64,000 nt of DNA from Chrysemys picta bellii. Taxonomy: Eukaryota. Every line of letters starts with the position of its first letter. Within the stretch, counting starts at the first letter, position 1. Positions 2,046 to 56,267 of this stretch are shown piece by piece. The translations under genes and the position numbers were made by a program. Under the pieces are notes generated by a model. That model was not told where the DNA came from. It saw nothing but the letters and a program-made list of their open reading frames with translations, and made no database searches. The stretch is from the NCBI RefSeq assembly GCF_011386835.1, contig NC_088795.1:144026001-144090000 (forward strand). Reading direction: 5' to 3'.

Positions 2046-3278
2046 GTGGAGCAGCTGGGAACGCAATGGAACCAGCTCGTTCAAGACCTAATCACCCAGC
2101 ACCAGGACTTCCAGCGGCAATGTCTCCAGCAGCTCGCAGCGGCGCTGGCCCGACCTGGAGAGGCACAGCCAGGAGGCGCAGCCGGGACCACACGGTCCAG
2201 CCCCCCGATCCGGCTGACGAAGATGGTACCCAGCGATGACCCGGAAGCCTTTCTCGTCACCTTCGAGCGGGTGGCCGCCGTCGCCGGCTGGGCCCCGGAG
2301 CTATGGGCTTCCATCTTGGCCCCGTACTTGACTGGGACGACGCAGACAGTCTATCGAGGCCTGTCGGTGGAAGCCGCCCAAGACTACAGCCAAGTAAAGG
2401 CTGCCATTCTGGATGCCCTGGATGTGAGCCCCGAGACTTTCCGCCAGCAGTTTAGGAGTCTGACCTACCCCACGGGGGCCCGGCCTCGACGGGTGGCCCA
2501 GGAACTCCGGGAAACCTGCAAGCGGTGGTTGCAGCCTGAGCGCCGAACGTCGGAAGAGTTAATGGAGCAGGTGGTGCTGGAGCAGTTCACCCACGTTCTT
2601 CCACCACGGGGACGGGCCTGGGTCCTCCGCCACCGGCCAGCAACCCTGGCCGCCGCCGTTTCACTAATGGAGGACTTCCTTGCGGCTGAAATGCCGATAG
2701 GCCCGGGAGTTCGAGTAGCCCCACCAGGGGCAGAGCACCCTAACCCCAAGAAGAAAGGGGCGCCCGCTCGAGCGGATTTACGGGTTTCCTCCCGGGGAAC
2801 CGAGGACTGGACTCGTGCCCCGGTGGTGCCCAGGCGACCCACTCGGATCCCGATCCCCGCAGGGCGAAGAGACCACCGAAGTCCTCCTGGAAACCACTCT
2901 GGGACTCGGCTCCGGACGGGACGGGCAACCCTGGGGCCCTGTTTCTCCTGCGGGGAGTACGGCCATCTCCAGAGGGATTGCCCGGGATTGGAGTGTACCT
3001 TTGGTCAGGTCTGTGCAGGGGAGGCTCGTGCCCGTCCTTCTCAAGCGGCTAAGCTCACCGTACCGGTGGTCATTGAGGGATACCCGACGGTGGCCCTCCT
3101 CAACTTGGGCTGCGGACAGACGCTAGTCCGCCGACACTTTGGTCCCCCGGCGGGCGCCCGACTGGGTGAAATTCGCCTACAGTGCATCCATGGGGACATC
3201 CAGCCCTACCAGAGTACCCGGGCCCAACTGACGATTGAGGGGGTCACCCGATCAATGATGGTGGGACTTGCCCCATGA
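2046..3278 (+). pseudogene. Gag (SCAN-like capsid, zinc knuckle) and aspartic protease, 5'-truncated, ends at an in-frame TGA
   Basis: [22 protein letters not shown]2CX4HX4C; protease motif degraded to ALLNLG; same frame resumes at 3291 (VILGRDW). Confidence 0.88.
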
Positions 3279-3639
3279 CTGGCATACCCCGTGATCCTGG
3301 GTCGGGACTGGCCGGAGTTTCCAGCAATCCTCCGCTGCCACGCAGGAAACGACCCTCGGGCCATGCCAGCCTTAGAAGGGGAGGCCCCCGAGAGCGAAGG
3401 AGAGGAGAGAGAAGCCCCTGAGACAACCAGCTCGACGGGAGAACCCGAGAATGCTTCCCCAGGAGCAGGGGAGAATCCCTCACCCACCACGGACTTTTGC
3501 TGGGATCAACGGGCCGACCCCACACTTCAGCGGGTATACGAACAATTGGCCGTGTCGGAGGGGACTGTCCTCGACCCTGGTCGAGCGGCCCAGTGGCCAC
3601 ACTTTGAGTTGCGGCAGGAGCGCCTGTATCGTGTCGAAC

Positions 3640-4730
3640 GGGACCCCCACACGGGGGAGACCCAGACCCAACTCCTCGTTCCCCGGTGTCATCGACGGTC
3701 CGTCATGAAGTTGGCCCACGACGTCCCCGCGGCTGGACACCTCGGTCACGAGAAGACCCTGGCCCGGATTTTGGGACGCTTCTTCTGGCCGGGGGTGTAC
3801 CAGGAGGTAAAGAATTATTGTAATTCCTGCCCGGGTTGCCAGTTGGCTGCCCCGGCGCGGGCTCCCAAGGCCCCGTTGATCCCGATGCCCCTAATCGAGA
3901 CCCTCTTTGAGCGCGTGGCCATGGACCTGGTGGGGCCTCTTCCCAAGAGCAGAGCGGGGTTTCAATACATCTTAGTGATGTTGGACTATGCCACCTGGTT
4001 CCCCGAGGCAATTCCCCTCCGGAACATTACAGCCCGCACGATCACCGATGAGCTGGTGAAGGTTTTTGCCCGCGTCGGCCTACCCCACGAAATCCTTACG
4101 GATCAAGGGACGAACTTTGCGGTTGCTCCGGCAGGTGTGTGAGCTTCTGGGGGTCAAGCAACTGCGGACGTCAGTCTATCATCCCCAGACTGATGGACTG
4201 GTCGAGAGGTTTAACCGGACCCTAAAAGACATGCTCCGTAAGTTTCCCCAGGAGGACCTTCGGCGATGGGACCAGCTACTCCCGCCCTTGCTCCTGGCAG
4301 TCCGAGAGGTCCCCCAGTCGTCGACGAACTTCTCGCCGTTTGAACTGCTGTACGGCCGTCAACCGCGGGGCCTATTGGACCTAATGAGGGAAACTTGGGA
4401 GCAAACCCCCTCACCGGCCCAGGGCCTCTTCAAGTACGTGATCCAGCTCCAAGAGCGTCTTAAGCAGGCTGGAGACTGGTCCCGAGAGAATTTGAAAGCC
4501 GCCCAGGAGGCGCAAGCCCAGACGTACAACCGGGACGCCCAAACACGGGACTTTTTACCCAGAGACCGGGTATTACTCCTCCTCCCCTCCAGTGAGTCGA
4601 AGATTCTGGCTCGCTGGCAAGGACCATATGAGGTAGTCCGGAAGGTGGGCCCGGTTACATATGAGATCGACCAGCCCGATCGGAAGAAGAGGATACAGCG
4701 GTACCACGTCAACCTGCTCAAGCCCTGGCG
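3640..4730 (+). pseudogene. Integrase with frameshift near 4120
   Basis: AHDVPAAGHLG...CNSCPGC zinc finger, MDLVGP, TDQGTNF, YHPQTDGLVERFN, WQGPY. Confidence 0.9.
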
Positions 4731-5029
4731 GGAACGGGAAGCGCTTTTGATTAACCCCTACCCACCAGAACCTGAGCTAGGGCCCCAGATAGCCCATACC
4801 CAGGACCCTGAGGAACCCCAACTTGGGGAGACCCTAACGGAGGACCAACTCAAGCAAACCCGGTGCCTCCTACGAGCCTTCCCTCACACCTTCACGGCCC
4901 AACCGGGAGCCACCACCCTGGTGTACCATAGGATCCAAACGGAGCCGGGGGTGGTTATTCGTGGCGCGACCAGGCCCTTGCCATATCACCGGAGATGCGT
5001 CGTGGATAAGGAGGTACGGGCGATGCTGG

Positions 5030-6215
5030 ACCTGGGGGTGATTGAACCCTCGCACAGCGAGTGGCGTAGCCCAGTCGTGCTGGTACCGAAGCCCGACGGC
5101 TCCCAACGGTTCTGCATCGACTTCAGGCGCGTGAATGCCATCTCCAAGTTTGATGCCTACCCCATGCCCCGGATAGCCGAGATGTTGGCCCGGTTAGGAG
5201 GAGCCCGCTACATCACGACCCTTGACCTTAGCAAGGGGTATTGGCAAATCCCCCTGGAACCTACTTCCAGGGAGAAAACTGCATTCGCCACCCCTAAGGG
5301 CTTATACCAGTTTACCCGAATGCCCTTCAGTCTCCACGGGGCCCCGGCCACGTTTCAGCGCCTGATGGACCGCCTCCTCCAACCCCACCAAGACTACGCG
5401 GCGGCCTATTTGGATGACGTGGTCATTTACAGTCCGTAGTGGGAGAACCATCTAGAAAGGGTCGCAGCCGTCCTGAGGTCCCTGCGGGCAGCCGGGCAAA
5501 TGGCCAACCCGAAGAAGTGCTGCATCGGCCGACAAGAAACCAAGTATCTGGGGTACGCTATCGGACATGGACAGGTAAAACCGCTGGTGGACAAGGTGCA
5601 GGCCATTGCAACCTGCCCCCCACCCGCCACGAAACGGCAGGTATGCCACTTTCTGGGGCTGGCGGGGTATTATCGACGCTTCATCCCCCAATTTGCGGCA
5701 ATTGCCGCCCCCTTAACGGGGCTCTTGACGAAGGAAAGCCCACGGCAAGTGGTCTGGACCCGCGAGTGCGACGAGGCCTTCCAAACCCTCAAAACAAGCC
5801 TCTGCCAAGAGCCAGTCTTATATAGCCCCGATTTTAACCAGGCCTTTGTCCTGCAAACGGACGCTTCGGAGGTGAGCCTAGGGGCGGTCCTCTCCCAAGA
5901 GGTCAGCGGGGAAGAGCATCCAGTCCTCTACATCAGTCGGAAGCTGTTCCCCCGAGAGAAGAATTATGCGGTGGTGGAAAAGGAAGCCCTAGCCACGAAG
6001 TGGGCTTGTGACGCCCTGCGCTACTACCTCCTAGGAGCCCCTTTCATCTTGGTCACCGACCACTCTGCCCTCCAGTGGTTGGCCCGCATGAAGGACCATA
6101 ATATGCGGCTGCAACGGTGGTACTTGGCGCTGCAACCTTATGCCTTCACCGTTTGCCATCGGGCCGGGAAAGACCACGCGAACGCCGACTTCCTTTCCCG
6201 CCTAGGGGGTATGGA
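5030..6215 (+). pseudogene. Reverse transcriptase and RNase H with in-frame TAG at 5437-5439
   Basis: SPVVLVPKPDGSQRFCIDFR, LDLSKGYWQ, YLDD; LQTDAS, EKEALA, TDH, ADFLSR. Confidence 0.92.
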
Positions 6216-6247
6216 AGAGTCTGTCCCCGGTACCCGGGAACCAGCCT

Positions 6248-6258
6248 TGAGGGGGGGG
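6248..6258 (+). other. Polypurine tract
   Basis: GAGGGGGGGG run just upstream of the 3' LTR start. Confidence 0.8.
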
Positions 6259-6261
6259 CCG

Positions 6262-7102
6262 TGTAGCGGGGCGGCCTGGCTCACAGCCGCCCCTGTAAGG
6301 GACGAGCCAGAACAGCCGCCAGAGTGGGCGGAGCCACCACCGCCTGTCCCCACCCCTGGAAGTGAAGGGGCGGGACAGGAAGTATAAAGGCCAAGCCACA
6401 GCGCTCAGTAGCTGCCCGGCAGCGGGAGAGGACAGACGCTGGTGCCCGAGCTCCCGCTGGCCTGAGCCTGCCCAGGGCCCGGTATTCAGAGGAGGACTGG
6501 CCGAGCCTGCCCCGGGCCCGGTATCCGGAGGAGGACTGGCCGAGCCTGCCAAGAGCCCTGTATCCGGAGGAGGACTGGCCGAGCCTGCCCAGGGCCCGGT
6601 ATCCGGAGGAGGACTGGCCGAGCCGACCCCGAGCCCGGTATCCGGAGGAGCGGCCTGAGCTCACCCCCGCCGAGTGTCCGGAGGAACCGACCGATCTACC
6701 CAGCGCTCGGGGCCCGGAGAAGCCCATGATCTGGGACACGGCAGACGAGACTCAGGATGTCAGGTACCCATGGAGGAGGAGATGGGAAGTGGCCCGGGGA
6801 TAGCAGACCCCGAACCCATGTCAGTGTGTTGCGGTCAGGATCCCCACTGACGATGGACTGCTGCGGATAGGGCCCCGGGCTGGAACACAGTGGAGTGGGT
6901 GGGCCTGTGTTCCCCCCTGCCACCCCGCGCCGGGTGGCAGTCTCTCCTCCTCCCTGCATAAGGGCCTGAGCTCTGAACTGTTACTTGTGTGCTCAATCCC
7001 TGCCCAAGGGCCTGAGCTGTGAACTGTTATTAGCTTTGTAGCGGGGCGGCCTGGCTCCCAGCCGCCCCTGTGAGGGACGAGCCCCACCCCGGAACCTCTA
7101 CA
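6262..7102 (+). repeat. 3' LTR of the Gmr1-like element
   Basis: TGTAG...CTACA termini; TATAAA near 6383; start motif repeated internally at 7037. Confidence 0.88.
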
Positions 7103-7589
7103 GGCTCTCAACACTCAATTGAAGGGAACAAATAAGCAGGCTGGTAGCAGGGCCTGAGTGAGGGAAGATATCAGCATCTTAAGGGCCTAATTGGCTCCTC
7201 CTACTTCAGTTGACTGCCTGTTCTCCTCAAGGGGGTTCAGGGAAGCAGCAGGAACCAGGAAGCTCCCTGAGAAGCTGGTGTGAATCAATCCAGGCTCCTG
7301 GGGGTGCTGGAGAGGTACATAAGAGACTCCTCCTCCTCTCTCTCCCTGCAGCTCCTGCTGCTTTCTATTATTCCCTGTCCCCTTTTCTCCTGCCTGCCTG
7401 TTCTGTCTCTTGTGCCCTCCTTCCTCCAGCCCAGCACTCCACCATCTCTGTGCATCTCGAGCAGAGAGAATACAGATGCACCAGCAGCAGACACAATTTT
7501 CTACACTCTGGGTCCTAGTGATGCCCCCACACAGACACAGTCTGGCACCTGAGGCGGCTGCCTCAGTTCTCCTCATGGTAAGGCCAGCC

Positions 7590-7650
7590 CTGCTGGGGAT
7601 TACAGTGGACGAGAAGCTGGATATGAGTCAGCAGTGGGCCCTTGTTGCCC
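7590..7650 (+). mobile_element. CR1 LINE RT fragment
   Basis: Encodes GITVDEKLDMSQQWALVA, a typical CR1 ORF2 segment. Confidence 0.7.
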
Positions 7651-8778
7651 CGTATCTGGGCAAGAGGGACTGAGGGGGGGGAAAGGGCTGTGACTCCAGT
7701 TTGCTCATGTCCCCCACCCCCACCTCAGTTCCACCTGCAACCGACACTATTCGTGGTGTGTGTGACCCCCGCAGCGCCTGGGCGCCCCATTGTCCTGCAC
7801 ACACGCAGCCAGACAGGCTCTGCCCCCAGCAGCTCCCAGTCGACAGAGAAGCCCCAGGCAAAGGGCCAGGCCGAACCGAGGGGATCCGGCGCACGTCAGG
7901 CCCTCCCCTGTGCCGGGCATGGAGCATTTCCCCGAGGGCAGCCGTCGCTCACCATGCCCCAGAGCAGGCGAGCTTCTGAGCAGCACGAGGGGCCTGTGGT
8001 TAGAGCCCATGGCTGGGAGTCAGGCCGTCCGGGGTCTCCCCAGGGAAGTGTTAATGTGCAAGGCCAGGTGTGCAAAGGGAGGCACTGAGCAGCCTGCCCC
8101 CGTCACTAGCAGTGCCCGGCTCCCGGGTCAGTGCCCAACTCACCACCCGGCAGCTGCCTGGGATGGCTGCTGGCCTCCTGCGGGGGCTGGGTTCGGCTCA
8201 CGTACGCCCACGACAAGGCCGGGGAGAATTTCCCGAATGTTTTTCTGTTCGTTGTGATCACTGGCTGGGGGAGACAAATCCAACTGCCCAATGAACGCTC
8301 CAGGGGGCCTGGCGAAGTGGCTGTGAAGGGGGATTATGCCCGTTCGTGCCTTAAACAATCCCCGAGCTGTGTGCCTGCACCGGGGCTCCCACCCCTTCCC
8401 TCCCACCCCTTCGTTCCTCTCTATCCAGCTGACACCTGCCCCCTCTGGGGTCTCCCAACCCCTCCTGCTGCCCAGGGTTCCCCTCCCATCCCAGGGCTGG
8501 GCCCCCTGCCCTGCTCCTTGCTGGGGATGGTGAAAGAGTAGAGGAGGAATAGGGAATCCAGGAAGTGCCCCATGGAGTCGAGGAGCTTCCCGTGGGCTTG
8601 GTCCCAGCCGATGGTTATTGTCTTTTGTTCCCAGCAGCGTGGGTCAAAGGCCCCGGATACAGAGCGGCTGTCTTCTCCCGCTGGGGAGGTACCGCGCTGG
8701 GCAAGGGGACGAGAGTGACGGGACCACTGCAGTGCGAGCTGCTCTGGGTGTGGATCTGGGGGAGGGGGAGACGCTGAT

Positions 8779-9852
8779 TGTAACTATGCTGGTTCTGGTG
8801 GGACCCAACTGAGAGTGCCAATTCAGGACAAATTGCTCAAACAGGGCAGTTACAGCCCAAGGCTGGGGGTTTTCCACCTCTAAGGCAAACCAAACCAGCC
8901 AGACTAAGAGGACTTTGGTTTCACCCCACTGGCTAACCACAAGTCACACAAGCAATTCCCTTAGACACTCCAGTTTCCCAGTATCACCACCAGTGCCACT
9001 CGTTATGGGGACAAATGGTTATGAAAACCAATACCCCAGTAAAAGAAAAAAGGTTCTTCTGATCCCTAAGGACCAAGCCACAGACCCAGGTCAATATACA
9101 AATCAGATCTTACCCACAAATCACGCTGTTGCCAATCCTTTAGAACCTAAAATCTAAAGGTTTATTGATAAAAGAAAAAAGATAGAGATGAGAGCTAGAA
9201 TTGGTTAAATGGAATCAATTACATACAGTAATGGCAAAGTCTTGGTTCAGGCTTGTAGCAGTGATAGAATAAACTGCAGGTTCAAATCAAGTCTCTGGAA
9301 TACATCCCCCGCTGGGATGGGTCCTCAGTCCTTTGTTCAGAGCTTCTGTTTGTAGCAAAGTCCCTCCAGAGGTAAGAAGCAGGATTGAAGACAAGATGGA
9401 GATGAGGCATCAGCCTTTTATAGTCTTTTCCAGGTGTAAGAACACCTCTTTGTTCTTACTGTGGAAAATTACAGCAAAATGGAGTCTGGAGTCACATGGG
9501 CCAGTCTCTGCATACTTTGCTGAGTTACAAACCGTATTTGCCTTCTCTCAATGAGTCCATTGTATAGCTGATGGTCCTTAATGGGCCATCAAGCAGGCTA
9601 GGCAGAGCTAACACCAACTTGTCTGGGATGTCACCCAGAAGCATAGCATAAGTTTGCCATACAGACAGTACAGAGCCAATATTCATAACTTCAACTACAA
9701 AATTGATACACACATATAGACAGAATAATCATAACCAGCCAACCATAACCTTGTCTTAGACATCTCATTTGTCCCCCTTTATACACGATTTGGTGCCACT
9801 ACAGGACTTTGGTTGCTTCTATATGGTCCCGGTTCAAATCAATAACGTGACA
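8779..9852 (-). mobile_element. Solo LTR, family A
   Basis: TG...CA ends, 5-bp TSD CTGAT (8774-8778 / 9853-9857); empty site in unit 2 near 31858. Confidence 0.93.
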
Positions 9853-10325
9853 CTGATCCACAAACATCTGCCATCCCCTTCCAGACAGGATCACAGCCCA
9901 TTAATCTGGGGAGCTGCTGAGAGCGTGGGGCATGGACCTCCATGGCCAGCCTGTCGCCAGCTAGGGCTGGCGTTTAAAGAGGCAGCGTCTGCCTAGTGAA
10001 GCCCCCTGCCCTGCTCCTCAGCCCCTCTACCTTGAGCCCCTGCGAGAGATTGTCTCCCCCCGTCCCCAAACCATACCTGGTGCTCCTCTCGCAGGGCAGG
10101 GCTGATGGGTGGGTGCTGAGGTAGCTGGGAGTGGGGGTGATGAGATGGCAGGGCGGTGGGTGGAGGCGTGACAGGTGTTTGCCAGGAGTCAGTGAGGGTG
10201 GGGGTAGTCCAGTGCAGCGAGAAGCCAGGGGCACTGCGGGAAGTGGCCGGTGGATCAGGAATGTCCCAACCCGCTCCCCTGATTTAATCTCTGTCTGCTC
10301 TAGTGTGCCTGGGCTGAGCGGCCCC

Positions 10326-11880
10326 ATGGCCCCGTACCGCATCCGGCAGTACGAGGACGGTGACTACGAGGCCGTGTGCACCATGTTCGGCCATGGGGTT
10401 ATGGAGCACACTCCTGCTGCGTTCATCTACATGCTGAAGTGTCCCCAGACCCAGCTGCACTTCCTGGGCCTGTTCCTGGTGGTGCTCGCGGCCTCCGGGT
10501 CCCTCCTGGTCTCCCTTCTGGCTCTCCTGCTCGCTCTCACTGGGGCCTGGTTTTGCATCTGGTCTCTCTGGACCGATTACATCCAGCAGTCTCTTCACAA
10601 CAACCTACTGGACATCCGGAGAACCTACCTGGAGGCAGCAGACTCTTGTCTCTGGGTGGCAGGGGCTGAGGGGGCGGTGGTGGGTGCGGTGGGGGCTGTC
10701 CTGCCGGAGTTCCCCTCAGAAAGGGGGCACGCCCTGGAACTAAAGCGTATGTCCGTGGAGAGGTATTAGGGGGCTTATTCCTTCACCCTCTCACTTTCCT
10801 GGTCCTGCTTGCATGAACAGAGAGCAACAATACACGAAGTCCGAAGATGCAAACAATTCAATGTTTATAGGGATGAACTTCCAGCAAGCAAGTTGATTCC
10901 AGTTTCCTTCCTCAGCTCTGACACCACAGAGCCTTGCCTGTGTCCCTGTTCCCATCCCCTGTTCCCATTCCCCCCACCTTACTTCCTGATTGACTGCAGA
11001 CTATATAGTAAAACTTGAGTTCTGTTTAGCTATACCTTAACCAATCATTTTCCTGAAATGTAACTAACCAATCCTAACATACTGTAACATGGTTATTTAA
11101 CCAATTATATCCCACCACCTTAATTGGTTTACACCCAACAAAATTAATTATACAGCAGACAGAAACAATCACAGAACCAGACAGAGATTATACAGACAAA
11201 CAATAGGGAAGTGGAGACTACAGTGATAGAACAATACAGAAATGAGGATTTGACATCCCAGCTATTGATAAGTGAGTTCTTGCCAGACAGGATCCAATCA
11301 AACTAAGTTTCCTTTTACATCTTCTAGGCTCTTCCCTTTCTCTGGAGGTGATGGGAATATCAGGACAGGATTGTATTCCTAACAGCCCAATAGCACCTTA
11401 TTTCCATGTGACTGGTTTGGAATGTGAGGATATGACCGTTCACTTCCCAGTTTATGGCTGCCTCTGCTGCTTAGCCGAAGGCCTTAGCCTAAGAACCAGG
11501 CCTCAGACTGTCCCTTACACAGACAGACAGTGATTTTGATTCTTTCTTTTATACCTCTATAACTAGCTTAGTGATAAAAATACACCTAAATTCTTAAAGT
11601 GTAGGTCTTTGCAGACAGGCCTGAATATCTCTATCCTAACAGGAGGGAGCACCGGGGCCGGGGCATCACCAGGGCGCTCTGCAGGACGGTCATCCGCTTC
11701 GCCCAGGAACGCAGGTACAGTGCAGTCGTGCTCTCCACCTCCATGGTTCACTACTCGGCCCAGCAGCTGTACGAGAGCATGGGCTTCCGGAGGGTCTCGC
11801 AGAGGTCCCCATCGCTCCTCACCAGCTTCCTGCAGTTCTCCGTCTTCTATTACCGATACGAGATTCCAGGGTCTCGCTGA
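10326..11880 (+). CDS. NAT8: NAT8/camello-like N-acetyltransferase copy 1, LTR-interrupted; either truncated (147 aa) or spliced 10326-10762 + 11643-11880 (224 aa)
   Basis: Both halves are open and colinear with copies 2 and 3; a GT...AG junction restores frame. Confidence 0.8.
10764..11641 (-). mobile_element. Solo LTR (family F), antisense inside NAT8 copy 1 CDS
   Basis: TATTAGG...CCTAACA ends; TSD AGAGG/GGAGG; CCAAT and TATA-like motifs read on the minus strand; absent from copies 2 and 3. Confidence 0.92.
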
Positions 11881-11989
11881 AGGCTCAGGGGGGGCGATTC
11901 TTCCCCTGCCTGCTCAGCCGCTGGGAGCTTTGCCTGGCTTGTTAATTAACTCCCAGCAAGTTGCTACTTTTTTACCTTTTGGGTTAAAA

Positions 11990-11995
11990 AATAAA
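11990..11995 (+). terminator. Polyadenylation signal, NAT8 copy 1
   Basis: AATAAA about 110 nt after the stop; conserved in all three copies. Confidence 0.65.
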
Positions 11996-13574
11996 CTGAG
12001 CTTGGAGGAAAAGTCTCACGTGCGTGACACTGTTCTTGTGCTGGCTTGGGATTATTGTTCCCCCAGGGGCTCCCCCTTCCCCACAGCCACCTGGGTCCCC
12101 TGGATCTGAACTTCACCCCTGGAGCTGAGCCGGCCGGGATCAGACTCACCCACATTTGCTCAGTGGTTCCTAGATGGTCCCGGACCCCTAAAGAACCAGG
12201 CGACCCTGGCAAGGAAACCTCCGTGAAGGTTCATTTGAATTTTCACCCACTCTTCTTTGACACGTTCGTGTCTCATTCCTGTCACCCACAGAAATGTCCA
12301 ATCCTTGGATCTTGCCAATTTCTTCACCCCCCACAACATCCAGTAGCAGTGAGTTCCACAGGCTGGCTATGTGTTGTGTGGAAAAGGCAATTCCTTTGCT
12401 AAGTTTACAATGTCCCACCTTTCGCTTTCGCTGGCTGTCCCCTTGTTGGTGTATCCTGAGACAAGGAGAACAGAAGCGCTGGATCTTCGTTCTGTAGCCC
12501 ATTCGTTCTTTTATTCATGTTGAGCACATCACCTTAGAAAGGAGATGGATAAGAGTGAACAAGCCCAGGCTCGTTGATCTCTTCATGGGACAGTTTTTTC
12601 CAGGCCCTTGTTGGTCCCCGTTGCCCTCCTCTGAACCCGCTAGTTGTGCAATGTCCTTTCGGAGCCGGACCCTATCCAGATCGACCTCTCTTTGCTGGCC
12701 CATGTGGGCCGGGCACGTGGCAGCCCTGGGTGCACATGCTCACTTGCTCTTGCTTCTCGCAGCCCAGAGTCCTCGGCACCTCCCCGACAGCCCCGCTCGC
12801 TCACCCGTGTCCAGGCAGTGCGAGGTGTCTCGATTGCAGCAGCAGCCGTGGCAGGAGACGAGCGAGGGTGTGAACGCCCCGCTTGGCCGGAGCACACAAC
12901 TCTGTCTGGGGGTTCGTGTCCTCAGCGCTATGGGCACAGCTGGGCGGCTGGTTCCCAGGGCAGTCGACGGAGACGTGCTAGCTCTGATTTGAGCTGGCGG
13001 GCTAAAAGTAGCCGTGTGGCTGCAGTAGCTCAGGCTAGCCGGCTGGGCACATACCCAGGGGAGGGCAGCTGAGACTGGACGTGGGCGGCTAGCCAGAGCT
13101 ATGGGTCTCCTAGAGCGGCATGACCCCAATGGCCTGGTGTGCCAGTGCCATGCAGCACCCCAGAGCCCCCACACCACACAGGGGCTGGGAGGTGCCAATC
13201 CGTTGGGGTCCTCGGCTGGGTGGTGCCGCCCAGGGGGAAAGCCCTGCACTCTTGTCACCAGACAGCAGCCAGGATTCTGTAGGATCAGATTCTCCCCAGG
13301 GACTCCTGCAGCCGCTGAGCCGGGCCCCAGGGGCTGGTGGAGAGCAGGCCCCGCAGCGGGAGGAATGCCTGGTTTTAATCCTGTCCAGCTCAAGGCTGCA
13401 CGGTGCAATGGTTAGGGCGCTAGCTTCGGATTGGGGCGATGCCAGTGCTATGCCCTGCTCCGCCACAGCCTGCCTGGGTGCCCTAGGGCCAGTCACTTAG
13501 CCGCTCTGTGCCTCAGTCCCTGACTGTGCTGGGGCGAGCAGCCCTGCCTTGCCTACAACGGGGTGTGAGGACAG

Positions 13575-13867
13575 AGATGCTATTATTAAAGGGAAATCAT
13601 GCCTCACCAATCTACTAGAATTCATTGAGGTGCTCAACAAGCATGTGGAAAAAGGGGATCCAGTGGATATTGTGTACTTAGATTTTCAGAAGGCCTTTGA
13701 CAAGGTCCCTCAAAGGCTCTTACGCAAAGTGAGCTGCCGTGGGATAAGAGGGAAGGTCCTCTCCTGGACTGGTAACTGGTTAAAAGATAGGAAACAAAGG
13801 GTAGGAATAAATGGTCAGTTTTCAGAGTGGAGAGAGGTAAATGGTGGTGTTCCCCAGCAGTCTGTAC
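13575..13867 (+). mobile_element. CR1 LINE RT fragment
   Basis: [12 protein letters not shown]...[12 protein letters not shown]...GVPQ. Confidence 0.9.
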
Positions 13868-13869
13868 TG

Positions 13870-15734
13870 CCCCCCCCCCTCAGGTTGGGCTTGCTTCCAG
13901 CTATACAGTTCTTGGGGTCTGTTTCCACTGTAGCAGTCACCAGGACCCCAACTTCCATCTCCAGGATCCATGTCTCTGTGCCCCTCTTCCACTCCATAAC
14001 AGCCAGTTCCTGCTTCTGGGTCTCTATTTGTGCTTCTCTCTGGGCCTCAACTGCTTTGTCTTTTAAGTTCAGGGTTTGCTGGTGGGCAGCCATTTGTCTC
14101 GCTGCTTCTACCTCCATGGCAGCCTTTTCCTGGGCAAACTGCACGTCAATTTCCATTTATCTCCCCTTGAGACTGTCACTCGATGGGCTGGGATACCACA
14201 GAGAACCCCCTCATGTCAGAACAGGCGTCCCTACACTCCTGTCAGCACAGACCCAGAGGTTGGGCCACACCCGTCTGCAGTTCACTGGAACTGAGATTCA
14301 CTCAGCCCAGGGGCTTCTCAGTTAACAGGGACTTTCCCAGGGCCCAGTGTTCAGCCTTTCTGGGCAATCTGCAACCTGTGCAGTTCCAGCTTCTTCTGAA
14401 CTTCACTCTCACTCATATTGCTTCCTTTTCTGTCCCTATATCCCTCACCCGAAATAAGCAAACAGAAAATAACAAACCAGTAACCAGTTCATCTGCTCTC
14501 CGGCCACCACACTTAAAACTCACTTTAAATCACTACCAGTGTCTCAAAGCAATCAACTGTGCACAGATCCTGTTCGACTACACCATTGTGATGGGTTCAG
14601 TCACAGAGACCCCCTTGGCATTGCCACCTGATGTGCTGGGACTGCCTCCGAGCCCGTTTTCCCTGCCAGCTTGGGACTTCAGTACCCTGCCTGCTGGAGC
14701 CAGACACGCTAGCCTGCGGCAAACACAGACCCAAGTCTGAACCACGTCCCCCACAAGCTGCAGGCTTAACTGAAAACAGCTTAAGAAGTGCTCCTGTCTC
14801 CAGCACCCAGACACACAGCTCCCAATGGGGTCCAAACCCCAAATAAATCCATTTCACCCTGTATAAAGCTTATGCAGGGTAAACCCATAAATTGTCCGCC
14901 CTCTATAACACCGATAGAGAGATATGCACAGCTGTTTGCTCCCCCAGGTATTAATACTTGCTCAGGGTTAATTAATAAGCAAAAAGTGATTTTATTAAAT
15001 ATAAAAAGTAGGATTTAAGTGGTTCCAAGTAATAACAGACAGAACAAAGTAAATTACCAAGCAAAATAAAACAAAAACATGCAAGTCGAAGCCTAATACA
15101 TTAATAAACTGATTACAGATGAAATCTCACCCTCAGAGATGTTCCAATAAGCTTCTACCACAGACCAGACTCCTTCCTAGTCTGGGCCCAATCCTTTCCC
15201 CTGGTACAGTCCTTGTTCCAGCTCAGGTGGTAGCTAGGGGATTTCTCATGACTGCAGCCCCCTTTGTTCTGTTCCACCCCCTTATATGGCTTTGGCCCAA
15301 GGCGGGAATCTTTTTTCTCTTTGGGTCCCCATCCCTCCTTCTAAATGGAAAAGTACCAGGTTTAAGATGGATTCCAGTACCAGGTGACTTGGTCACATGT
15401 CCTGTGAGACCCCCAAGCCTTCATTCTTCCCGACCTGTCTCACAGGAAGGCCTGCAAGTAAACAGAGCCTCTACAGTCAATTGTCCTGTTTGATGGGCGC
15501 CATCAAGATTCTAAACCACCATTAATGACCCACACTTTGCATAACTACAATAGGACCACAGAGGTATACTTCATATTCCTAGTTATAGATACAAGAGTGA
15601 TACATTTACACAAATAGGATGAACACACTCAGTAGATTATAAGCTTTGTAATGGTCCCTTACGAGAGACCTTTTGCATGAAGCATATTCCAGTTACATCA
15701 TATTCACTCATTAGCATATTTTCATAACATCACA
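13870..15734 (-). mobile_element. Truncated Gypsy element: 5' LTR (family E, 14587-15734), PBS (14570-14585), gag coiled-coil N-terminus
   Basis: TG...CA LTR; PBS TGGTGTAGTCGAACAG resembles the complement of the tRNA-Ser 3' end; ORF 13815-14156 is coiled-coil-like. Confidence 0.8.
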
Positions 15735-21998: not shown

Positions 21999-23282
21999 AT
22001 GGAGCCCGCTGCGACCATCGCTGCAGTTGTGGCCGCTCTCAACGTCTCGCAGCTTATCATAAAGGTTTCCCTGAGGCAGATGCAGAAAAGTCAGGCAAGG
22101 AGGCTACGGCACCGCGGTGATGTCCTGAAGTCTGAGAGTAGCACAGACCTGTCAGAAAGCAGGCGACCCAGCGCCGAGGACATCACAGTGGCAATGGGTC
22201 ATGTTGATGCCGTGGAACGGCGATTCTGGGCACGGGAGACAAGCACTGAGTGGTGGGACCGCATAGTGCTGCAGGTCTGGGATGAATCCCAGTGGCTGCG
22301 AAACTTTCGCATGCGGAAGGGAACTTTCCTGGAACTTTGTGAGTTGCTGTCCCCTGCCCTGAAGCGCAGTGACACCCGGTTGCGAGCTGCACTGAGTGTA
22401 CAGAAGCGAGTGGCCATAGCCCTGTGGAAGCTTGCAACGCCAGACAGCTACCGGTCAGTCGCGAACCAGTTTGGGGTGGGCAAATCTACCGTGGGGGTTG
22501 TTGTGATGCAAGTAGCGAAGGCAATCGTTGATGTACTGCTGCCAAAGGTAGTGACCCTGGGAAACGTGGAGGCGATCATAGATGGCTTCGCAGCGATGGG
22601 ATTCCCAAACTGCGGTGGGGCCATAGATGGAACTCACATCCCTATCCTGGCACCGGACCACCAGGCCACCCAGTACATTAACCGAAAGGGATACTTTTCC
22701 ATGGTGCTGCAAGCACTGGTGGACCACAGGGGACGTTTTACCAACATCTACGTGGGATGGCCGGGCAAGGTTCATGACGCTCGTGTTTTCAGGAACTCTG
22801 GTCTGTTTAGACGGCTGCAACAAGGTATTTACTTCCCGGACCACAAAATAACTGTTGGGGATGTGGAGATGCCTATAGTCATCCTCGGGGACCCAGCCTA
22901 CCCGCTAATGCCCTGGCTCATGAAGCCCTATACTGGCGCCCTGGACACTGAAAAAGAACTCTTCAACTACCGGCTGAGCAAGTGCAGAATGGTGGTGGAG
23001 TGTGCTTTTGGCCGTCTCAAGGGGAGATGGAGAAGCTTACTGACTCGCTGTGATCTCAGCGAAACCAATATCCCCATTGTTATAGCAGCTTGCTGTGTGC
23101 TCCACAATCTCTGTGAGAGCAAGGGGGAGACCTTTATGGCGGGGTGGGAGGTTGAGGAAAATAGCCTGGCTGGTGATTACTCACAGCCAGACAGCCGGGC
23201 GATTAGAAGAGACCAGCGGGAAGCGCTGTGCATCCGGGAGGCTTTGAAAGCAAAGTTCCTGAGTGAGCAGGGTAACCTGTGA
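21999..23282 (+). CDS. Harbinger DDE transposase (HARBI1-like), 427 aa, intact
   Basis: GAIDGTHI, GKVHDARV, ILGDPAYPL, RMVVECAFGRLKGRW, CCVLHNLC. Confidence 0.93.
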   Translation: MEPAATIAAVVAALNVSQLIIKVSLRQMQKSQARRLRHRGDVLKSESSTDLSESRRPSAEDITVAMGHVDAVERRFWARETSTEWWDRIVLQVWDESQWLRNFRMRKGTFLELCELLSPALKRSDTRLRAALSVQKRVAIALWKLATPDSYRSVANQFGVGKSTVGVVVMQVAKAIVDVLLPKVVTLGNVEAIIDGFAAMGFPNCGGAIDGTHIPILAPDHQATQYINRKGYFSMVLQALVDHRGRFTNIYVGWPGKVHDARVFRNSGLFRRLQQGIYFPDHKITVGDVEMPIVILGDPAYPLMPWLMKPYTGALDTEKELFNYRLSKCRMVVECAFGRLKGRWRSLLTRCDLSETNIPIVIAACCVLHNLCESKGETFMAGWEVEENSLAGDYSQPDSRAIRRDQREALCIREALKAKFLSEQGNL

Positions 23283-24031
23283 TTTTATAGTTTGTGTACT
23301 GAGAAGCTAAACCTGCCCCCGTTTCTTTACCCAGGTAATGTTGACTATCCTATCCAGTTACATACCCCCTTCACCCCCCCTCCAACACACGTGTCGAAAT
23401 AAAAATAGTTCTACTTTGTTAAAGCACACCGTTTTCTTTAATACTGTTTTAGCGGGAATTTTTTAAAACTGGGACGCAGACTGTGGTGCGGGGCGGGTCT
23501 AGTGTTGTGATGCGAATGCAGCTTCTAAACTCAAGGATTGACAGGCTCCGCTGCGGTGGGATGCTTGTTTCAACGGAGCCTGTCACCCCTCCTGATCGGG
23601 ACTGTGTGTATGGGAGGTCTATTTGACTTTGTGGCAGGGGGAGGACGGTTACAGATCCCATGCTGTGTGGCTCTGTGATCCTGTCTAAGGACCGGCGCTT
23701 AAGATCTGTAACTGCCCTCCCCCGCCACAAAGTCACAGAGCAACCCACCCCCCCCAACATTACATCAAAACAACCTCCCAGACTAACCGGGGCAACTAGT
23801 CACTGCATCACTGCACTGTGTATATGCCCTGCTGCTGTGCCTGCCCCCGACTATGTACCCTGCCAAAGGAGACTGTCCTGTCCAATTTCCAACCCCCTTT
23901 CCCCTCCTCCTCCAAAAGAACATGATTGAAACAGTAGTTAACAGAAACGAATTTTTTATTATCAACTACACATGGCATTGGGAGGTGAAACTTGGACGTG
24001 GGCTTGTGTCAGGCGGGAAGGAAAGAACTTT

Positions 24032-24507
24032 TCAAATTTTGGGAAATGAGAGCCTTCTGCTACTAGAGCTCTCTGCAGGGGTGGAGTGAGAGTTAGCAGG
24101 GACTCTGCCGCCTCTCCTTCTTTGCACTTTGGGTGAGGTGGGTATGGGACTTGGTGGCGGGGGAGGGCGGTTAGAGATGGACTGCAGCGGGGCTCTGTCC
24201 TCCTGCCTCCGTTCCTGCAGAACATCCACAAGGCGCCGGAGCGTGTCCGTTTGCTCCCTCAGTAGTCCAAGCAGCGTTTGAGTCGCCTGCTGGTCTTCCT
24301 GCCGCCACCTCTCCTCCCGATCCATGTTGGCTTGGTGCATTCGGGTCAAGTTCTCCCGCCACTGGGTCTGCTGTGCTGCCTGGGCTTGGGAAGAGGCCAT
24401 AAGCTCAGAGAACATGTCCTCCCGTGTCCTCTTCTTCCTACGCCTAATCCGCGCTAGCCTCTGGGAGTGTGATTCCAGGCTAGGTTGTGAGACAGTCGCA
24501 GACGGGG
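24032..24507 (-). CDS. Harbinger Myb/SANT protein, exon 2 (joined product 350 aa)
   Basis: Pyrimidine tract plus CAG at 24510-24508; phase-1 join A|CC; RRRKKR NLS-like motif, coiled coil; 577+476 nt = 351 codons. Confidence 0.82.
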
Positions 24508-25501
24508 CTGTGGAAATGGGAAAAAGGGAGTGAATTCCTCTGAAAGATAAATGTAGTTGTGAACAAAGAACATAGTCTTTCTCTGTGAACAAGACCATGC
24601 ACAGCACCTTTCACATGCGCACTCAGCACAAGGTCGAATTCTCGGCCTTCGCATTCTGTGCCTGGGGTCTTGAACAGCACATTTGAGAAGCGAGGCAGCA
24701 CAACGGAATTTCTGTTGCAGGCAGACATGGTAAGCCGTACACTTGTGGCAGTTTAAAACTTTTATATTACCACTGGCCTCATTTCACATTTAAATCAATG
24801 TCAGTCCCTGCTGCCAGCAATCCGGCAAGCGGGAACTCTGCCCCTGTCCCACCCCCTCGCGGCTGTCCCCGGGAATGATCCCTTTCGGCTGCCCCTCTCC
24901 CGCCTCCACCGCGTGGCTGCAAACCAGCGGTGACAGTTCTGTAAAGGAACGGGAAAGCAGTCCCAACACTAACATTCCCCTACCTAATTAAAAGCAGGTC
25001 ACCATGGCCGACATCACCCTGATGAGGATCTCCGAGAGCGACAAAGAGAGAATGCTCCGGGAAAGCCTCCAAAGACCAGGGCCGTATGCCGCCCTGCTGT
25101 GCAGAGCAATGATCCCCGAGTACCTGATAATCTCGTGGCGCGGCAACGTGTCGTACTTCGGAGGACCCAATAAGGCCGCTCTCCCCAAGAACCTCATGCA
25201 ACGGCTTTCAAGTTACCTCCAGGAGAGCTTCATCGAGATGTCCCAGGAGGATTACTGCTCTATCCCCGCACATATAGACCGCATTTTACTGTAGCTGCAG
25301 TAGCAGGGAATACACAGTAGAGCGGCTTGTGCAGGACAATCACTGAAAACCGGACATTGCTAGATTTCTTTTCAAAACTTGCACTGCCCCTTACTAAACC
25401 GTTAAGCGCCTAGGGCACACTAATCATGAACAACCCATTCTTTTAATTGTTAATATTCCTGTTTTGTTAAAAATAAATGTTTAGATGTTTACAACACTTA
25501 C

Positions 25502-32332: not shown

Positions 32333-33004
32333 ATGGCCCTGTACCGCATCCGGCAGTACGAGGATGGTGACTACGAGGCCGTGCGCACCATGTTCGGACG
32401 TGGGATTATGGAGCACACTCCTGCTGCGTTCATCTACATGCTGAAGTGTCCCCAGGCCCAGCTGCTCTTCCTGGGCCTGTTCCTGGCGGTGCTCGCGGCC
32501 TCCGGGTCCCTCCTGGTCTCCCTCCTGGCTCTCCTGCTCGGTCTCACTGGGGGCTGGTTTTGCAGCCGGTCTCTCTGGACCGATTATGTCCAGCAGTCTC
32601 TTCGCAACGACCTACTGGACATCCGGAGAACCTACCTGGAGGCAGCAGACTCTTGTCTCTGGGTGGCAGAGGCTGAGGGGTCAGTGGTGGGCATGGTGGG
32701 GGCCGTCCTGCCGGACGACCCCTCGGAAAGTGGGCACGCCCTGGAACTGAAGCGTATGTCCGTGGGGAGGGAGCACCGGGGCCGGGGCATAGGCAGGGCG
32801 CTCTGCAGGACGGTCATCCGCTTCGCCCAGGAACACGGGTACAGTGCGGTCGTGCTGTCCACCTCCATGGTTCACTACTCGGCCCAGCAGCTGTACGAGA
32901 GCATGGGCTTCCGGAGGGTCTTGGTGAGGTCTCCATCGCTCCTCGAGAGCTTTCTGCAGTTCTCCCTGTTTTATTACCGATACGAGGTTCCAGGGTCTCG
33001 CTGA
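32333..33004 (+). CDS. NAT8: NAT8/camello-like GNAT N-acetyltransferase copy 2, 223 aa, intact
   Basis: EHTPAAF, hydrophobic membrane segment, DLLDIRRTY, SCLWVAE, HRGRGIG acetyl-CoA motif, LYESMGF; AATAAA at 33114-33119. Confidence 0.92.
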   Translation: MALYRIRQYEDGDYEAVRTMFGRGIMEHTPAAFIYMLKCPQAQLLFLGLFLAVLAASGSLLVSLLALLLGLTGGWFCSRSLWTDYVQQSLRNDLLDIRRTYLEAADSCLWVAEAEGSVVGMVGAVLPDDPSESGHALELKRMSVGREHRGRGIGRALCRTVIRFAQEHGYSAVVLSTSMVHYSAQQLYESMGFRRVLVRSPSLLESFLQFSLFYYRYEVPGSR

Positions 33005-45523: not shown

Positions 45524-45659
45524 GGGACACAGACAAGGCTCTGTGGTGTCAGAGCTGAGGAAGGTGTGCAGAGGGAGGGGGTGCAGGTTCTGGGAGGGAG
45601 TTTGGGGATGGGAGGGGTGCAGAGGGATGGGGTGCAGGGATGAGGGCAGTGGGTTGTGG

Positions 45660-52434: not shown

Positions 52435-52437
<3 letters not shown>

Positions 52438-55595: not shown

Positions 55596-56267
55596 TCAGC
55601 GAGACCCTGGAATCTCGTATCGGTAATAGAAGACGGAGAACTGCAGGAAGCTGGCGAGGAGCGATGGGGACCTCTGCGAGACCCTCCGGAAGCCCATGCT
55701 CTCGTACAGCTGCTGGGCTGAGTACTGAACCATGGTGGTGTTCAGCACGACCGCACTGTACCCGCGTTCCTGGGCGAAGCGGATGACCGTCCTGCAGAGC
55801 GCCTTGGCGATGCCCCGGCCCCGGTGCTCCCTCCCCACAGACATACGCTTCAGTTCCAGGGCGCACCCCCTTTCTGACGGGTCCTCGGGTAGGACGGCCC
55901 CCACCATGCCCACCACCGCCCCCTCAGCCTCTGCCACCCAGAGACAAGAGTCTGCTGCCTCCAGGTAGGTTCTCCGGATGTCCAGTAGGTTGTTGTGAAG
56001 AAACTGCTGGGCGTAATCGTTCCAGAGAGACCGGATGTAAAACCAGGCCCCAGTGAGACCGAGCAGGAGAGCCAGGAGGGAGATCAGGAGGGACTCGGAG
56101 GCTGCGAGCACCACCAGGAACAGGCCCAGGAAGTGCAGCTGGGCCTGGGGACACTTCAGCATGTAGATGAACGCAGCAGGAGTGTGCTCCATAATCCCAC
56201 GTCCGAACATGGTGCACACGGCCTCGTAGTCACCGTCCTCGTAGTGCCGGATGCGGTACGGGGCCAT
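55596..56267 (-). CDS. NAT8: NAT8/camello-like N-acetyltransferase copy 3, 223 aa, intact
   Basis: Open frame, HRGRGIA motif, 30 aa differences from copy 2; poly(A) signal at 55481-55486. Confidence 0.92.
   Translation of the reverse strand: MAPYRIRHYEDGDYEAVCTMFGRGIMEHTPAAFIYMLKCPQAQLHFLGLFLVVLAASESLLISLLALLLGLTGAWFYIRSLWNDYAQQFLHNNLLDIRRTYLEAADSCLWVAEAEGAVVGMVGAVLPEDPSERGCALELKRMSVGREHRGRGIAKALCRTVIRFAQERGYSAVVLNTTMVQYSAQQLYESMGFRRVSQRSPSLLASFLQFSVFYYRYEIPGSR

What the first reader, a model, noticed from the sequence alone, without database searches (positions are those of the whole stretch)
10755..11660. Solo LTR plus its TSD forms a frame-restoring GT-AG intron candidate inside NAT8 copy 1
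Seen: an 878-bp antisense solo LTR (10764-11641) sits in the CDS with TSD AGAGG/GGAGG. The last G of the left TSD plus the LTR's first T gives GAG|GTATTA at 10763. The LTR's last A plus the first G of the right TSD gives TCTCTATCCTAACAG|G at 11642. Removing 10763-11642 (880 nt) gives GTG GAG AGG AGG GAG CAC CGG, i.e. V-E-R-R-E-H-R-G-R-G: one extra codon, an intact 224-aa ORF and the same stop and poly(A) site as the paralogues. The LTR end reads TA instead of TG, putting A at donor +3 (closer to consensus). I saw no AATAAA on the sense strand of the insert, and the 79 downstream codons are still open. Inference: an apparently killed gene may be rescued by a new intron made from an LTR. Caveats: the donor is weak at +4 to +6; copy 1 has T at the G/A position of the acetyl-CoA motif and a G-to-R change in ERGY; it lacks a 1.47-kb GC-rich upstream block.
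Basis: partly seen in the sequence, partly recalled or inferred. Interest (0 to 1): 0.85.

Follow-up and report, generated by a model that had tools for sequence, protein, structure and literature searches.

The report
Solo LTR modelled as NAT8 intron
A retroviral solo LTR sits inside the coding exon of one painted-turtle NAT8-like gene copy and, with its target-site duplication, happens to carry GT...AG ends that would restore the reading frame; but the only RNA-like data available here show the LTR kept in the transcript, so rescue by splicing is unproven.

Summary
The sequence observation is correct. An 878-bp LTR (10764-11641) with a 5-bp target-site duplication (TSD) splits copy 1 of three NAT8-like genes. 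Removing 10763-11642 gives an open 224-aa frame.

- The acceptor is a tandem CAGGAG. A second GT..AG intron (10763-11645, 883 nt) restores the frame with no extra codon.
- The window is Chrysemys picta bellii CM062322.1. RefSeq already models that 883-nt intron in copy 1 (XP_065454537.1) and in an LTR-bearing paralogue (XP_065453472.1).

Evidence against efficient splicing:
- The donor GAG|GTATTA is weak.
- RefSeq's GAG acceptor is the least favoured type, as expected for a homology-driven model.
- Contigs of two RNA-like runs (two studies) run unbroken from exon into LTR. No contig shows either spliced junction.
- Other database records hold the truncated 147-aa product.
- A third LTR-bearing paralogue has lost the donor G and carries two stop codons.

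Any TG..CA element with a G-NNN-G TSD gives such a pair automatically, so the coincidence is cheap.

Most likely copy 1 is a transcribed, truncated gene copy. Real splicing remains possible (about 25%) and needs raw RNA-seq reads or RT-PCR.

The parts
10304..10762 (+). 5' part of the NAT8-like copy 1 coding exon. The acceptor AG is at 10302-10303 and the ATG at 10326. There are 145 codons plus 2 nt before the candidate donor.
   Evidence: It is 92.5-93% identical to copies 2 and 3.
10759..10763 (.). Left copy of the 5-bp target-site duplication (AGAGG). Its last G is the G of the candidate GT donor.
   Evidence: Five-bp overlap of the paralogue alignments. This G is a C in paralogue L001.
10763..10768 (+). 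Candidate 5' splice site GAG|GTATTA. It is weak, with only positions -2 to +3 able to pair with U1.
   Evidence: The approximate PWM score is -0.9 bits against 8.7 for the consensus, rank 17 of 93.
10767..10769 (+). TAG stop codon reached if the LTR is retained, giving the 147-aa product ...KRMSVERY.
   Evidence: Exactly this 147-aa protein is in public databases (P0029).
10764..11641 (-). Solo LTR, 878 bp and 41% GC, with terminal inverted repeats TATTAGG...CCTAACA. Its sense strand is the window's minus strand, so it is antisense to NAT8.
   Evidence: Whole-genome contig depth is about 20-180 times that of unique flanks. In another copy the same end reads TG and is followed by the complement of a tRNA-His primer-binding site (loose end at 10766).
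11640..11645 (+). Tandem (NAGNAG) acceptor CAG|GAG|. RefSeq's ends at 11645 (no extra codon).
   Evidence: Published preference is CAG > TAG > AAG > GAG (PMC2699507).
11642..11646 (.). Right copy of the target-site duplication (GGAGG).
11646..11880 (+). 3' part of the copy 1 coding sequence. It holds the acetyl-CoA motif RGRGIT and ends at TGA 11878-11880. It is open in frame.
   Evidence: It is 94.8-96% identical to copies 2 and 3.
11990..11995 (+). AATAAA poly(A) signal shared with the paralogues.
   Evidence: The paralogue alignment runs on to 12220. Coverage in RNA-like run X5 stops within the 11947-12107 bin.
32333..33004 (+). Copy 2, an intact 223-aa NAT8-like coding sequence with an empty insertion site (GTG GGG AGG GAG).
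55596..56267 (-). Copy 3, an intact 223-aa NAT8-like coding sequence with an empty insertion site.

Best explanation
Copy 1 is an LTR-disrupted member of a large, recently duplicated NAT8-like cluster on Chrysemys picta bellii chromosome CM062322.1.

How it arose: a retroviral-type LTR element inserted antisense into the single coding exon of an ancestral copy and made the 5-bp TSD G-GAG-G. The locus now holds a solo LTR (how it became solo was not tested). The disrupted gene was then copied at least twice by segmental duplications of 8 kb or more.

Why the splice-like ends exist: an LTR starts with TG (here TA) and ends with CA, and this TSD starts and ends with G. A GT..AG pair that leaves +3 nt, or +0 nt with the next AG, therefore arises automatically.

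What happens now: the gene is transcribed through the LTR to its old poly(A) site. Most or all transcripts keep the LTR, so they encode a 147-aa product that lacks the acetyl-CoA-binding half of the GNAT fold. The RefSeq intron is most likely placed by protein homology.

Shown: the anatomy, the duplication history, the presence of the unspliced junction in RNA-like contigs, and the decay of one sister copy. Inferred: that splicing is absent or minor, and that the RefSeq intron is homology-driven.
For: - Anatomy and arithmetic.
- The window equals CM062322.1:144026001-144090000. Locus L003 is identical to window 7140-14880.
- LTR-bearing paralogues L004 (97.0% over 8 kb) and L001 (96.5% over 5.2 kb) carry the same LTR at the same site.
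- Run X5 covers only 10176-12107 among the unique bins, which matches the transcript limits. Its contig 10664-10795 has no mismatch (it carries the copy-1-private A at 10718). It crosses the donor unbroken at depth 4.2 and continues into the LTR as contigs 10767-11114.
- Run X1 has equal depth (41.6 and 41.5) in the two bins either side of the junction.
- No joint 10762>11643 or 10762>11646 was reported in X1, X5, X7 or X15.
- Words spanning the unspliced junction are held by RNA-like runs of two studies.
- The truncated 147-aa products P0029 and P0030, and the Ensembl read-through model P0024, are in public databases.
- The donor is weak. A GAG acceptor is the least preferred type.
- L001 has donor G>C, GAA>TAA, TAT>TAA and a 12-nt deletion.
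- The only two substitutions private to copy 1 are non-synonymous. One falls in the acetyl-CoA motif.
Against: - RefSeq models the LTR as a GT..AG intron in two paralogues (XP_065454537.1, XP_065453472.1). I could not see whether RNA-seq supports those introns.
- Copy 1 and L004 both keep the GT, the CAGGAG acceptor and fully open frames on both sides.
- The runs are only guessed to be RNA, their tissue is unknown, and they are kept as contigs. Contigs drop rare variants and cannot prove absence. At depth about 4 a minor spliced form would be missed.
- Open frames are not informative. About one disabling hit per copy is expected at this divergence, by my rough estimate.
Confidence: 0.6

Rival explanations
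1. The LTR plus part of the TSD is removed as a U2-type intron in a meaningful share of transcripts. The donor is at 10763 and the acceptor is mainly CAG| at 11642, perhaps also GAG| at 11645. This would give a 224- or 223-aa NAT8-like protein with a complete GNAT domain. It would be a real LTR-derived intron gain in a vertebrate coding exon, later spread by segmental duplication.
For: - The GT..AG ends are present and conserved in copy 1 and L004.
- The acceptor has a moderate pyrimidine tract (59% Y at -20..-4) and no AG in the 23 nt between 11618 and the CAG.
- The intron length and flanking exon sizes are ordinary.
- RefSeq models exist for two paralogues.
- The spliced product still scores 57.8 bits on Pfam Acetyltransf_1.
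- Both halves of the frame are open.
Against: - No spliced joint appears in any of three RNA-like runs, while contigs cross the donor unbroken.
- The donor lacks the consensus bases at +4 to +6.
- Competing AGs lie at 11614 and 11618.
- No database protein carries VERREHR, and no assembled short protein spans the junction.
- Sister copy L001 has decayed.
- The GNAT score is 12-14 bits below copies 2 and 3.
Confidence: 0.25
2. Copy 1 is essentially silent. On this view the 'RNA-like' contigs that cross the exon-LTR junction are genomic DNA, because the runs are mislabelled or contaminated, so nothing can be said about splicing either way.
For: - All runs are listed as 'RNA? (a guess: may be DNA)'.
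- X1 also covers unique stretches outside the coding exon: 7861-8007, 8133-8266 and 12122-12395.
- Copy 1 lacks the 1,464-bp GC-rich upstream block that copies 2 and 3 have.
Against: - X5 has zero depth in every unique intergenic bin. It has continuous depth from the 10176-10336 bin to the 11947-12107 bin, which matches the exon start (10304) and the poly(A) site (11990-11995).
- X1 shows a joint from about 8685 to about 10305, as expected of a spliced 5' UTR exon in a copy-1-like gene.
Confidence: 0.1

Closest known systems
Introner elements and other transposon-derived introns that co-opt a splice site from the target-site duplication (review PMC11282704; surveys PMC9860276, PMC12130899)
   Same: A mobile element sits in an exon, the TSD lies at the exon-intron boundaries, and TSD nucleotides complete the splice dinucleotides. 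Here the G of GT and the G of AG both come from the TSD.
   Different: Introners are mostly short DNA transposons that create many introns by transposition in protists, algae, fungi and tunicates, and they are demonstrably spliced. Here the element is an 878-bp retroviral-type solo LTR in a vertebrate. The copies arose by segmental duplication, not transposition. Splicing is not demonstrated.
NAGNAG tandem acceptors (PMC2699507)
   Same: CAGGAG at 11640-11645 is a NAGNAG motif. The two AGs give products differing by one codon (VERREHR or VEREHR).
   Different: Motifs containing GAG are regarded as implausible for alternative use. The upstream CAG is strongly preferred, so the RefSeq choice (GAG) is the mechanistically less likely one. 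No usage data exist for this site.
Endogenous retrovirus solo LTR with a tRNA-His primer-binding site in full-length relatives (the PBS is the same 18-mer as in HERV-H, PMC3253121)
   Same: It has TG...CA-type ends with a 7-bp inverted repeat, a 5-bp TSD and many genomic copies. Another copy is followed by the tRNA-His PBS 18-mer.
   Different: No homology to HERV-H itself was tested or is claimed. Only the PBS type is shared. The turtle family was not named because no repeat library was available.
NAT8 / NAT8B / NAT8-family (GNAT) membrane acetyltransferases
   Same: Copies 2 and 3 and the joined copy-1 product match Pfam Acetyltransf_1 and are 44-90% identical to annotated reptile and bird NAT8-like proteins over the N-terminal 147 aa.
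   Different: The unspliced copy-1 product (147 aa) has no GNAT hit. The joined product carries T instead of G/A in the acetyl-CoA motif and G instead of E in WVAEAEG.

Membership tests
Spliceosomal U2-type GT-AG intron | GT at the 5' end and AG at the 3' end | tested here: met
   GT is at 10763-10764. AG is at 11641-11642 and again at 11644-11645.
Spliceosomal U2-type GT-AG intron | Donor with adequate match to the MAG|GTRAGT consensus | tested here: inconclusive
   GAG|GTATTA matches at -2 to +3 only. An approximate PWM (frequencies recalled from memory) gives -0.9 bits against 8.7 for the consensus, rank 17 of 93 GTs. MaxEntScan and SpliceAI were not available.
Spliceosomal U2-type GT-AG intron | Exon-exon junction present in RNA | tested here: not met
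   No joint 10762>11643 or 10762>11646 appears in X1, X5 or X7. X5 contig 10664-10795 crosses the donor unbroken. These are contigs of runs only guessed to be RNA, so absence is not proven.
Transposon-derived intron with TSD-supplied splice sites (introner-like) | Element termini and TSD lie exactly at the exon-intron boundaries, with the TSD contributing to the splice sites | tested here: met
Transposon-derived intron with TSD-supplied splice sites (introner-like) | The same element family forms introns in many unrelated genes by transposition | not tested
   The three or more LTR-bearing NAT8 copies share 5-8 kb of flanks, so they arose by segmental duplication. Other genes were not surveyed.
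Retroviral-type solo LTR | TG..CA ends with a short inverted repeat, a TSD, no internal region, and multiple copies | tested here: met
   The ends read TATTAGG..CCTAACA, and another copy reads TG at the first end. The TSD is 5 bp. The 878-bp insert holds no ORF above 69 aa. Whole-genome contig depth is 20-180 times that of the flanks.
Retroviral-type solo LTR | Full-length relatives carry a tRNA primer-binding site next to the 5' LTR | tested here: met
   The X5 loose end before 10766 holds ATCCGAGTCACGGCACCA, the complement of the tRNA-His PBS, 3 nt from the LTR end. This also fixes the LTR sense strand as the window's minus strand.
GNAT acetyltransferase (NAT8-like) | Pfam Acetyltransf_1 domain above the gathering score | tested here: met
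   The joined copy-1 product scores 57.8 bits (cut-off 20.7). Copies 3 and 2 score 69.5 and 72.1. The unspliced 147-aa product has no hit.
GNAT acetyltransferase (NAT8-like) | Acetyl-CoA motif R/Q-x-x-G-x-G/A | tested here: not met
   Copy 1 reads RGRGIT. A154T is a copy-1-private CpG change. Copies 2 and 3 read RGRGIG and RGRGIA.
NAGNAG tandem acceptor | Two AGs 3 nt apart, both used | tested here: inconclusive
   The motif CAGGAG is present. Usage is untested. Published preference puts GAG last.

The most novel reading that the evidence does not exclude
An antisense retroviral solo LTR inserted into a vertebrate coding exon has become a working spliceosomal intron. The two G's of its own target-site duplication complete both splice dinucleotides. 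The intron-bearing gene was then propagated by segmental duplication to at least three NAT8-like paralogues, two of which still make full-length enzyme. This would be a recent, mechanistically transparent intron gain in an amniote.
Probability: 0.2. Interest if true: 0.75.

Novelty: new member of a known kind. Interest (0 to 1): 0.35.

Why it matters
Intron gain is held (my own knowledge) to be extremely rare in vertebrates, and documented transposon-made introns come mostly from protists, algae and fungi. If RNA data confirmed this one, it would be a datable amniote example made from an LTR, with sister copies as natural controls: two keep the GT and one has lost it.

It also shows a simple rule. 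Any TG..CA element with a 5-bp G-NNN-G TSD makes a frame-neutral GT..AG pair. That rule could be used to screen genomes for more cases.

As things stand, the practical point is about annotation. Two RefSeq protein models (XP_065454537.1, XP_065453472.1) rest on an LTR-spanning intron with a disfavoured GAG acceptor. They may describe proteins that are not made.

Tried and rejected
- Selection test. Private substitutions are mostly non-synonymous in intact non-LTR copies too (c2 4 syn/9 non-syn, c3 1/3, L002 0/5). The coding sequences are gene-conversion mosaics, diverging 3-9% against 1.4-2.2% in the LTR. dN/dS therefore cannot separate functional from dead copies.\n- Assembled short proteins across the junction. 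A 65-aa query centred on the junction returned only a bird NAT8 fragment.\n- Genomic loci of the Ensembl models P0001 and P0024. They are not on record. P0001's odd C-terminus would need a non-canonical CA..GT junction in the current assembly, so I did not count it as RNA evidence.\n- First reading of L001 as the orthologue in another species. Rejected once L003 proved that the window is C. picta itself, which makes L001, L002 and L004 paralogues.\n- The X1 joint 8685>10305 as proof that copy 1's 5' UTR is spliced. The 26-nt side is identical in c1, L001, L004 and L002, and the ends are not cleanly GT..AG on copy 1. It only suggests that X1 contains spliced RNA from a copy-1-like gene.\n- U12-type intron. 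GTATTA and TCCTAAC resemble the U12 signals only loosely, and the branch-like motif lies 3-7 nt from the AGs, which is too close. The single read-laying run had already been used.

Full report
**1. What is in the sequence**

The window holds three NAT8-like coding exons.
- Copy 1 lies on the + strand, with its ATG at 10326 and its stop at 11878-11880.
- Copy 2 lies at 32333-33004 (+) and copy 3 at 55596-56267 (-). Both are intact at 223 aa.

BLAST of the copy-1 locus against the window shows that homology to copies 2 and 3 ends at 10763 and resumes at 11642. The two alignments overlap by 5 bp in the paralogues' coordinates. Copy 1 therefore carries an 878-bp insertion (10764-11641) flanked by a 5-bp target-site duplication (TSD), AGAGG on the left and GGAGG on the right.

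Unspliced, the frame runs into TAG at 10767-10769 and gives 147 aa. Removing 10763-11642 (880 nt, GT..AG) gives a 224-aa open frame reading ...KRMSVERREHRGRGIT..., which ends at the paralogues' stop. The sense strand of the insert has no AATAAA or ATTAAA. The gene's own AATAAA lies at 11990-11995.

**2. The insert is a real LTR, antisense to the gene**

- Its ends form a 7-bp inverted repeat, TATTAGG...CCTAACA.
- In whole-genome contigs its depth is about 20-180 times that of the unique flanks, so it is a multi-copy family.
- One contig in run X5 matches the insert from 10766 onward. Before that point it carries TGCATCCGAGTCACGGCACCAAGATG.
- The final TG of that string is the canonical LTR start, where copy 1 has TA.
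- ATCCGAGTCACGGCACCA is the reverse complement of TGGTGCCGTGACTCGGAT. That 18-mer is the tRNA-His primer-binding site used as a PBS primer for HERV-H (PMC3253121) and matches the 3' end of tRNA-His (PMC11662652).

So full-length relatives exist. No second copy of this LTR lies in the window, apart from a 44-bp fragment at 45521-45564.

**3.

(a) *The acceptor is a tandem CAG|GAG| (11640-11645).* With the same donor, the intron 10763-11645 (883 nt) is also GT..AG. It restores the pre-insertion reading VEREHR with no extra codon.

(b) *The window is a known, annotated genome.* A protein search with the 147-aa piece led to Chrysemys picta bellii proteins. XP_065454537.1 (P0027, 285 aa, starting at ATG 10140) is copy 1 with exactly the 883-nt intron removed. 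Its locus L003 is identical to window 7140-14880, which places the window at CM062322.1:144026001-144090000 of GCA_011386835.2.

(c) *The LTR-bearing gene is not unique.* L004 (143.60 Mb; XP_065453472.1, 223 aa) is 97.0% identical to window 7000-15000. It carries the same LTR, donor and CAGGAG, and is modelled with an 880-nt intron. L001 (143.78 Mb; XP_065454536.1, 133 aa) is 96.5% identical over 5.2 kb, again with the same LTR at the same site. P0030 (147 aa) and the Ensembl read-through model P0024 point to a fourth such copy in the older assembly. The insertion therefore predates at least two segmental duplications. LTR divergence between copies is 1.4-2.2%. Words spanning the exon-LTR junction also occur in genome-sized runs under three other organism labels.

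**4. Is the GT..AG pair more than chance?**

Only slightly.
- An LTR begins with T(G) and ends with CA. If the TSD begins and ends with G, then GT and AG are created automatically. The excised length is LTR+2, which leaves TSD-2 = 3 nt.
- For a random 5-bp TSD the chance is about 1 in 16.
- Around the two junctions, 45 of 180 GT x AG pairs keep the frame open.
- The TA-for-TG change is shared by all three LTR-bearing copies. It merely swaps G for A at donor +3.

**5. Would the spliceosome use it?**

*Donor.* GAG|GTATTA can pair with U1 only from -2 to +3. With an approximate position-weight matrix it scores -0.9 bits, against 8.7 for the consensus, and ranks 17th of 93 GTs between 10140 and 11880. 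The matrix frequencies were recalled from memory, so the figures are rough.

*Acceptor.* The region has 59% pyrimidines at -20..-4. Competing AGs lie at 11614 (TCTTTGCAG|) and 11618.

*Choice between the tandem AGs.* Published work gives the order CAG > TAG > AAG > GAG and a scanning preference for the upstream AG (PMC2699507). RefSeq's GAG is the choice a protein-to-genome aligner would make, because it avoids a one-residue insertion. I infer from this that the RefSeq intron is homology-driven. I could not see the record's evidence line.

**6. RNA evidence**

Only contigs of runs guessed to be RNA were available, and only one read-laying run was allowed.

- *Run X5 looks like RNA.* Among unique bins it has depth only from the 10176-10336 bin to the 11947-12107 bin. 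That matches the exon start (10304) and the poly(A) site. Every intergenic unique bin has zero depth.
- *X5 crosses the donor unbroken.* Its contig 10664-10795 has no mismatch, so it carries the copy-1-private A at 10718. Its depth is 4.2. Contigs 10767-10890, 10874-11024 and 10995-11114 continue into the LTR at depths 3-7.
- *Why unbroken matters.* A spliced form at comparable abundance would have forced a branch at 10763/10764. This is an inference from how such assembly graphs behave.
- *Run X1.* It has depths of 41.6 and 41.5 in the two bins on either side of the junction.
- *No spliced joint.* No joint across the LTR was reported for X1, X5, X7 or the whole-genome run X15.
- *Junction words.* Words spanning the unspliced junction are identical in copy 1 and L004. 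They are held by four RNA-like runs of two studies.

Other sources agree:
- No protein with VERREHR exists in the 15-billion-sequence collection's cluster for this gene.
- No short assembled protein spans the junction.
- Public databases also hold the truncated 147-aa product of copy 1 (P0029) and of a sister copy (P0030, XP_005315495.1), and Ensembl has a read-through model (P0024).

All of this points to retention. It cannot exclude a minor or tissue-specific spliced form.

**7. Evolutionary evidence**

*L001 has decayed.* The donor G is now C (10763 equivalent). GAA>TAA lies before the LTR, there is a 12-nt deletion, and TAT>TAA lies eight codons before the normal stop. At least one LTR-bearing copy is therefore a decayed copy.

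*Copy 1 and L004 are open on both sides, but this is weak evidence.* At about 1% divergence per lineage I estimate roughly one disabling hit per copy under neutrality.

*A dN/dS test is uninformative.* The coding parts diverge more (3-9%) than the LTR and flanks (1.4-2.5%), because tracts have been exchanged with non-LTR copies. Private changes are mostly non-synonymous even in intact copies.

*Copy 1's own changes.* Its only two private changes are non-synonymous CpG transitions in the 3' half. One of them, A154T, turns the acetyl-CoA motif RGRGIA into RGRGIT.

*Domain scores.* The joined product still scores 57.8 bits on Pfam Acetyltransf_1, against 69.5 and 72.1 for copies 3 and 2. The 147-aa product has no hit.

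**8. Verdict**

The most likely reading (0.6) is as follows:
- Copy 1 is a transcribed, LTR-disrupted NAT8 paralogue.
- Its transcripts keep the LTR.
- They encode a truncated product with no recognisable GNAT domain, which probably has no enzyme activity.
- The frame-restoring GT..AG is a cheap by-product of LTR ends plus a G...G TSD.
- Homology-based annotation has turned that pair into an intron.

Real splicing at a meaningful level is still possible (about 0.25). A third reading, that copy 1 is essentially silent and the contigs are genomic DNA, gets about 0.1.

If true, this would be a rare, datable LTR-derived intron gain in an amniote. Its nearest analogues are introner-type transposon introns that co-opt TSD bases (PMC11282704). 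Raw RNA-seq reads or RT-PCR would settle it.

Noticed in passing
window 2046-6387 (+), flanked by tandem repeats at 354-1068 and 6281-6739: This is a gypsy-type retroelement whose gag ORF carries a SCAN domain and a zinc knuckle. Its integrase (H2C2 and rve domains) lies upstream of the reverse transcriptase and RNase H. That is the Gmr1-like domain order, and the known source of vertebrate SCAN domains (from my own knowledge).
   Followed up: partly
window 11714/11715 (CAG|GTACAG inside the 3' half of copy 1): In run X7 (organism B) a contig matches up to 11715 and then continues with GTGCCTGGGCTGCGCGGAACCATGGCC, the start of a NAT8 coding exon. This suggests chimeric read-through transcripts between tandem NAT8 copies that use a cryptic donor inside the coding sequence.
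   Followed up: no
window 28990-30454 and 58449-59018 region: A GC-rich block of about 1,464 bp lies upstream of copies 2 and 3. It is missing from copy 1, and no match to it turned up in L001 or L004. It may hold the promoter or CpG island of the intact copies.
   Followed up: partly
window 8677-8690 vs 31761-31784 and 56816-56839: Copies 2 and 3 read CCCGCTGG|GTAGGTACC at the end of the presumed 5' UTR exon, which is a good donor. Copy 1, L001, L004 and L002 read GGGGAGGTACC, which removes that GT and leaves GAG|GTACCG 4 nt downstream. The acceptor also differs, TAG|GG against TAG|TG.
   Followed up: partly
window 52411-56839 vs L002 (CM062322.1 about 143.81 Mb): The copy-3 segment has a 99.0% identical duplicate about 220 kb away on the same chromosome. 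The NAT8 cluster therefore contains very recent segmental duplications as well as older ones of about 3% divergence.
   Followed up: no
window 45320-48330: This is a long, strongly G-skewed tandem-repeat array (GC skew up to 0.74) that produces long spurious ORFs on both strands. Its edge (45521-45564) holds a 44-bp, 97.7% match to an internal part of the LTR, 10906-10949.
   Followed up: no
window 21999-26165: This is a PIF/Harbinger-type element. It has an intact 427-aa DDE_Tnp_4 transposase ORF and, by eye, Myb-like ORFs on the opposite strand. A related element with a Myb_DNA-bind_4 gene lies downstream of the L001 paralogue.
   Followed up: partly
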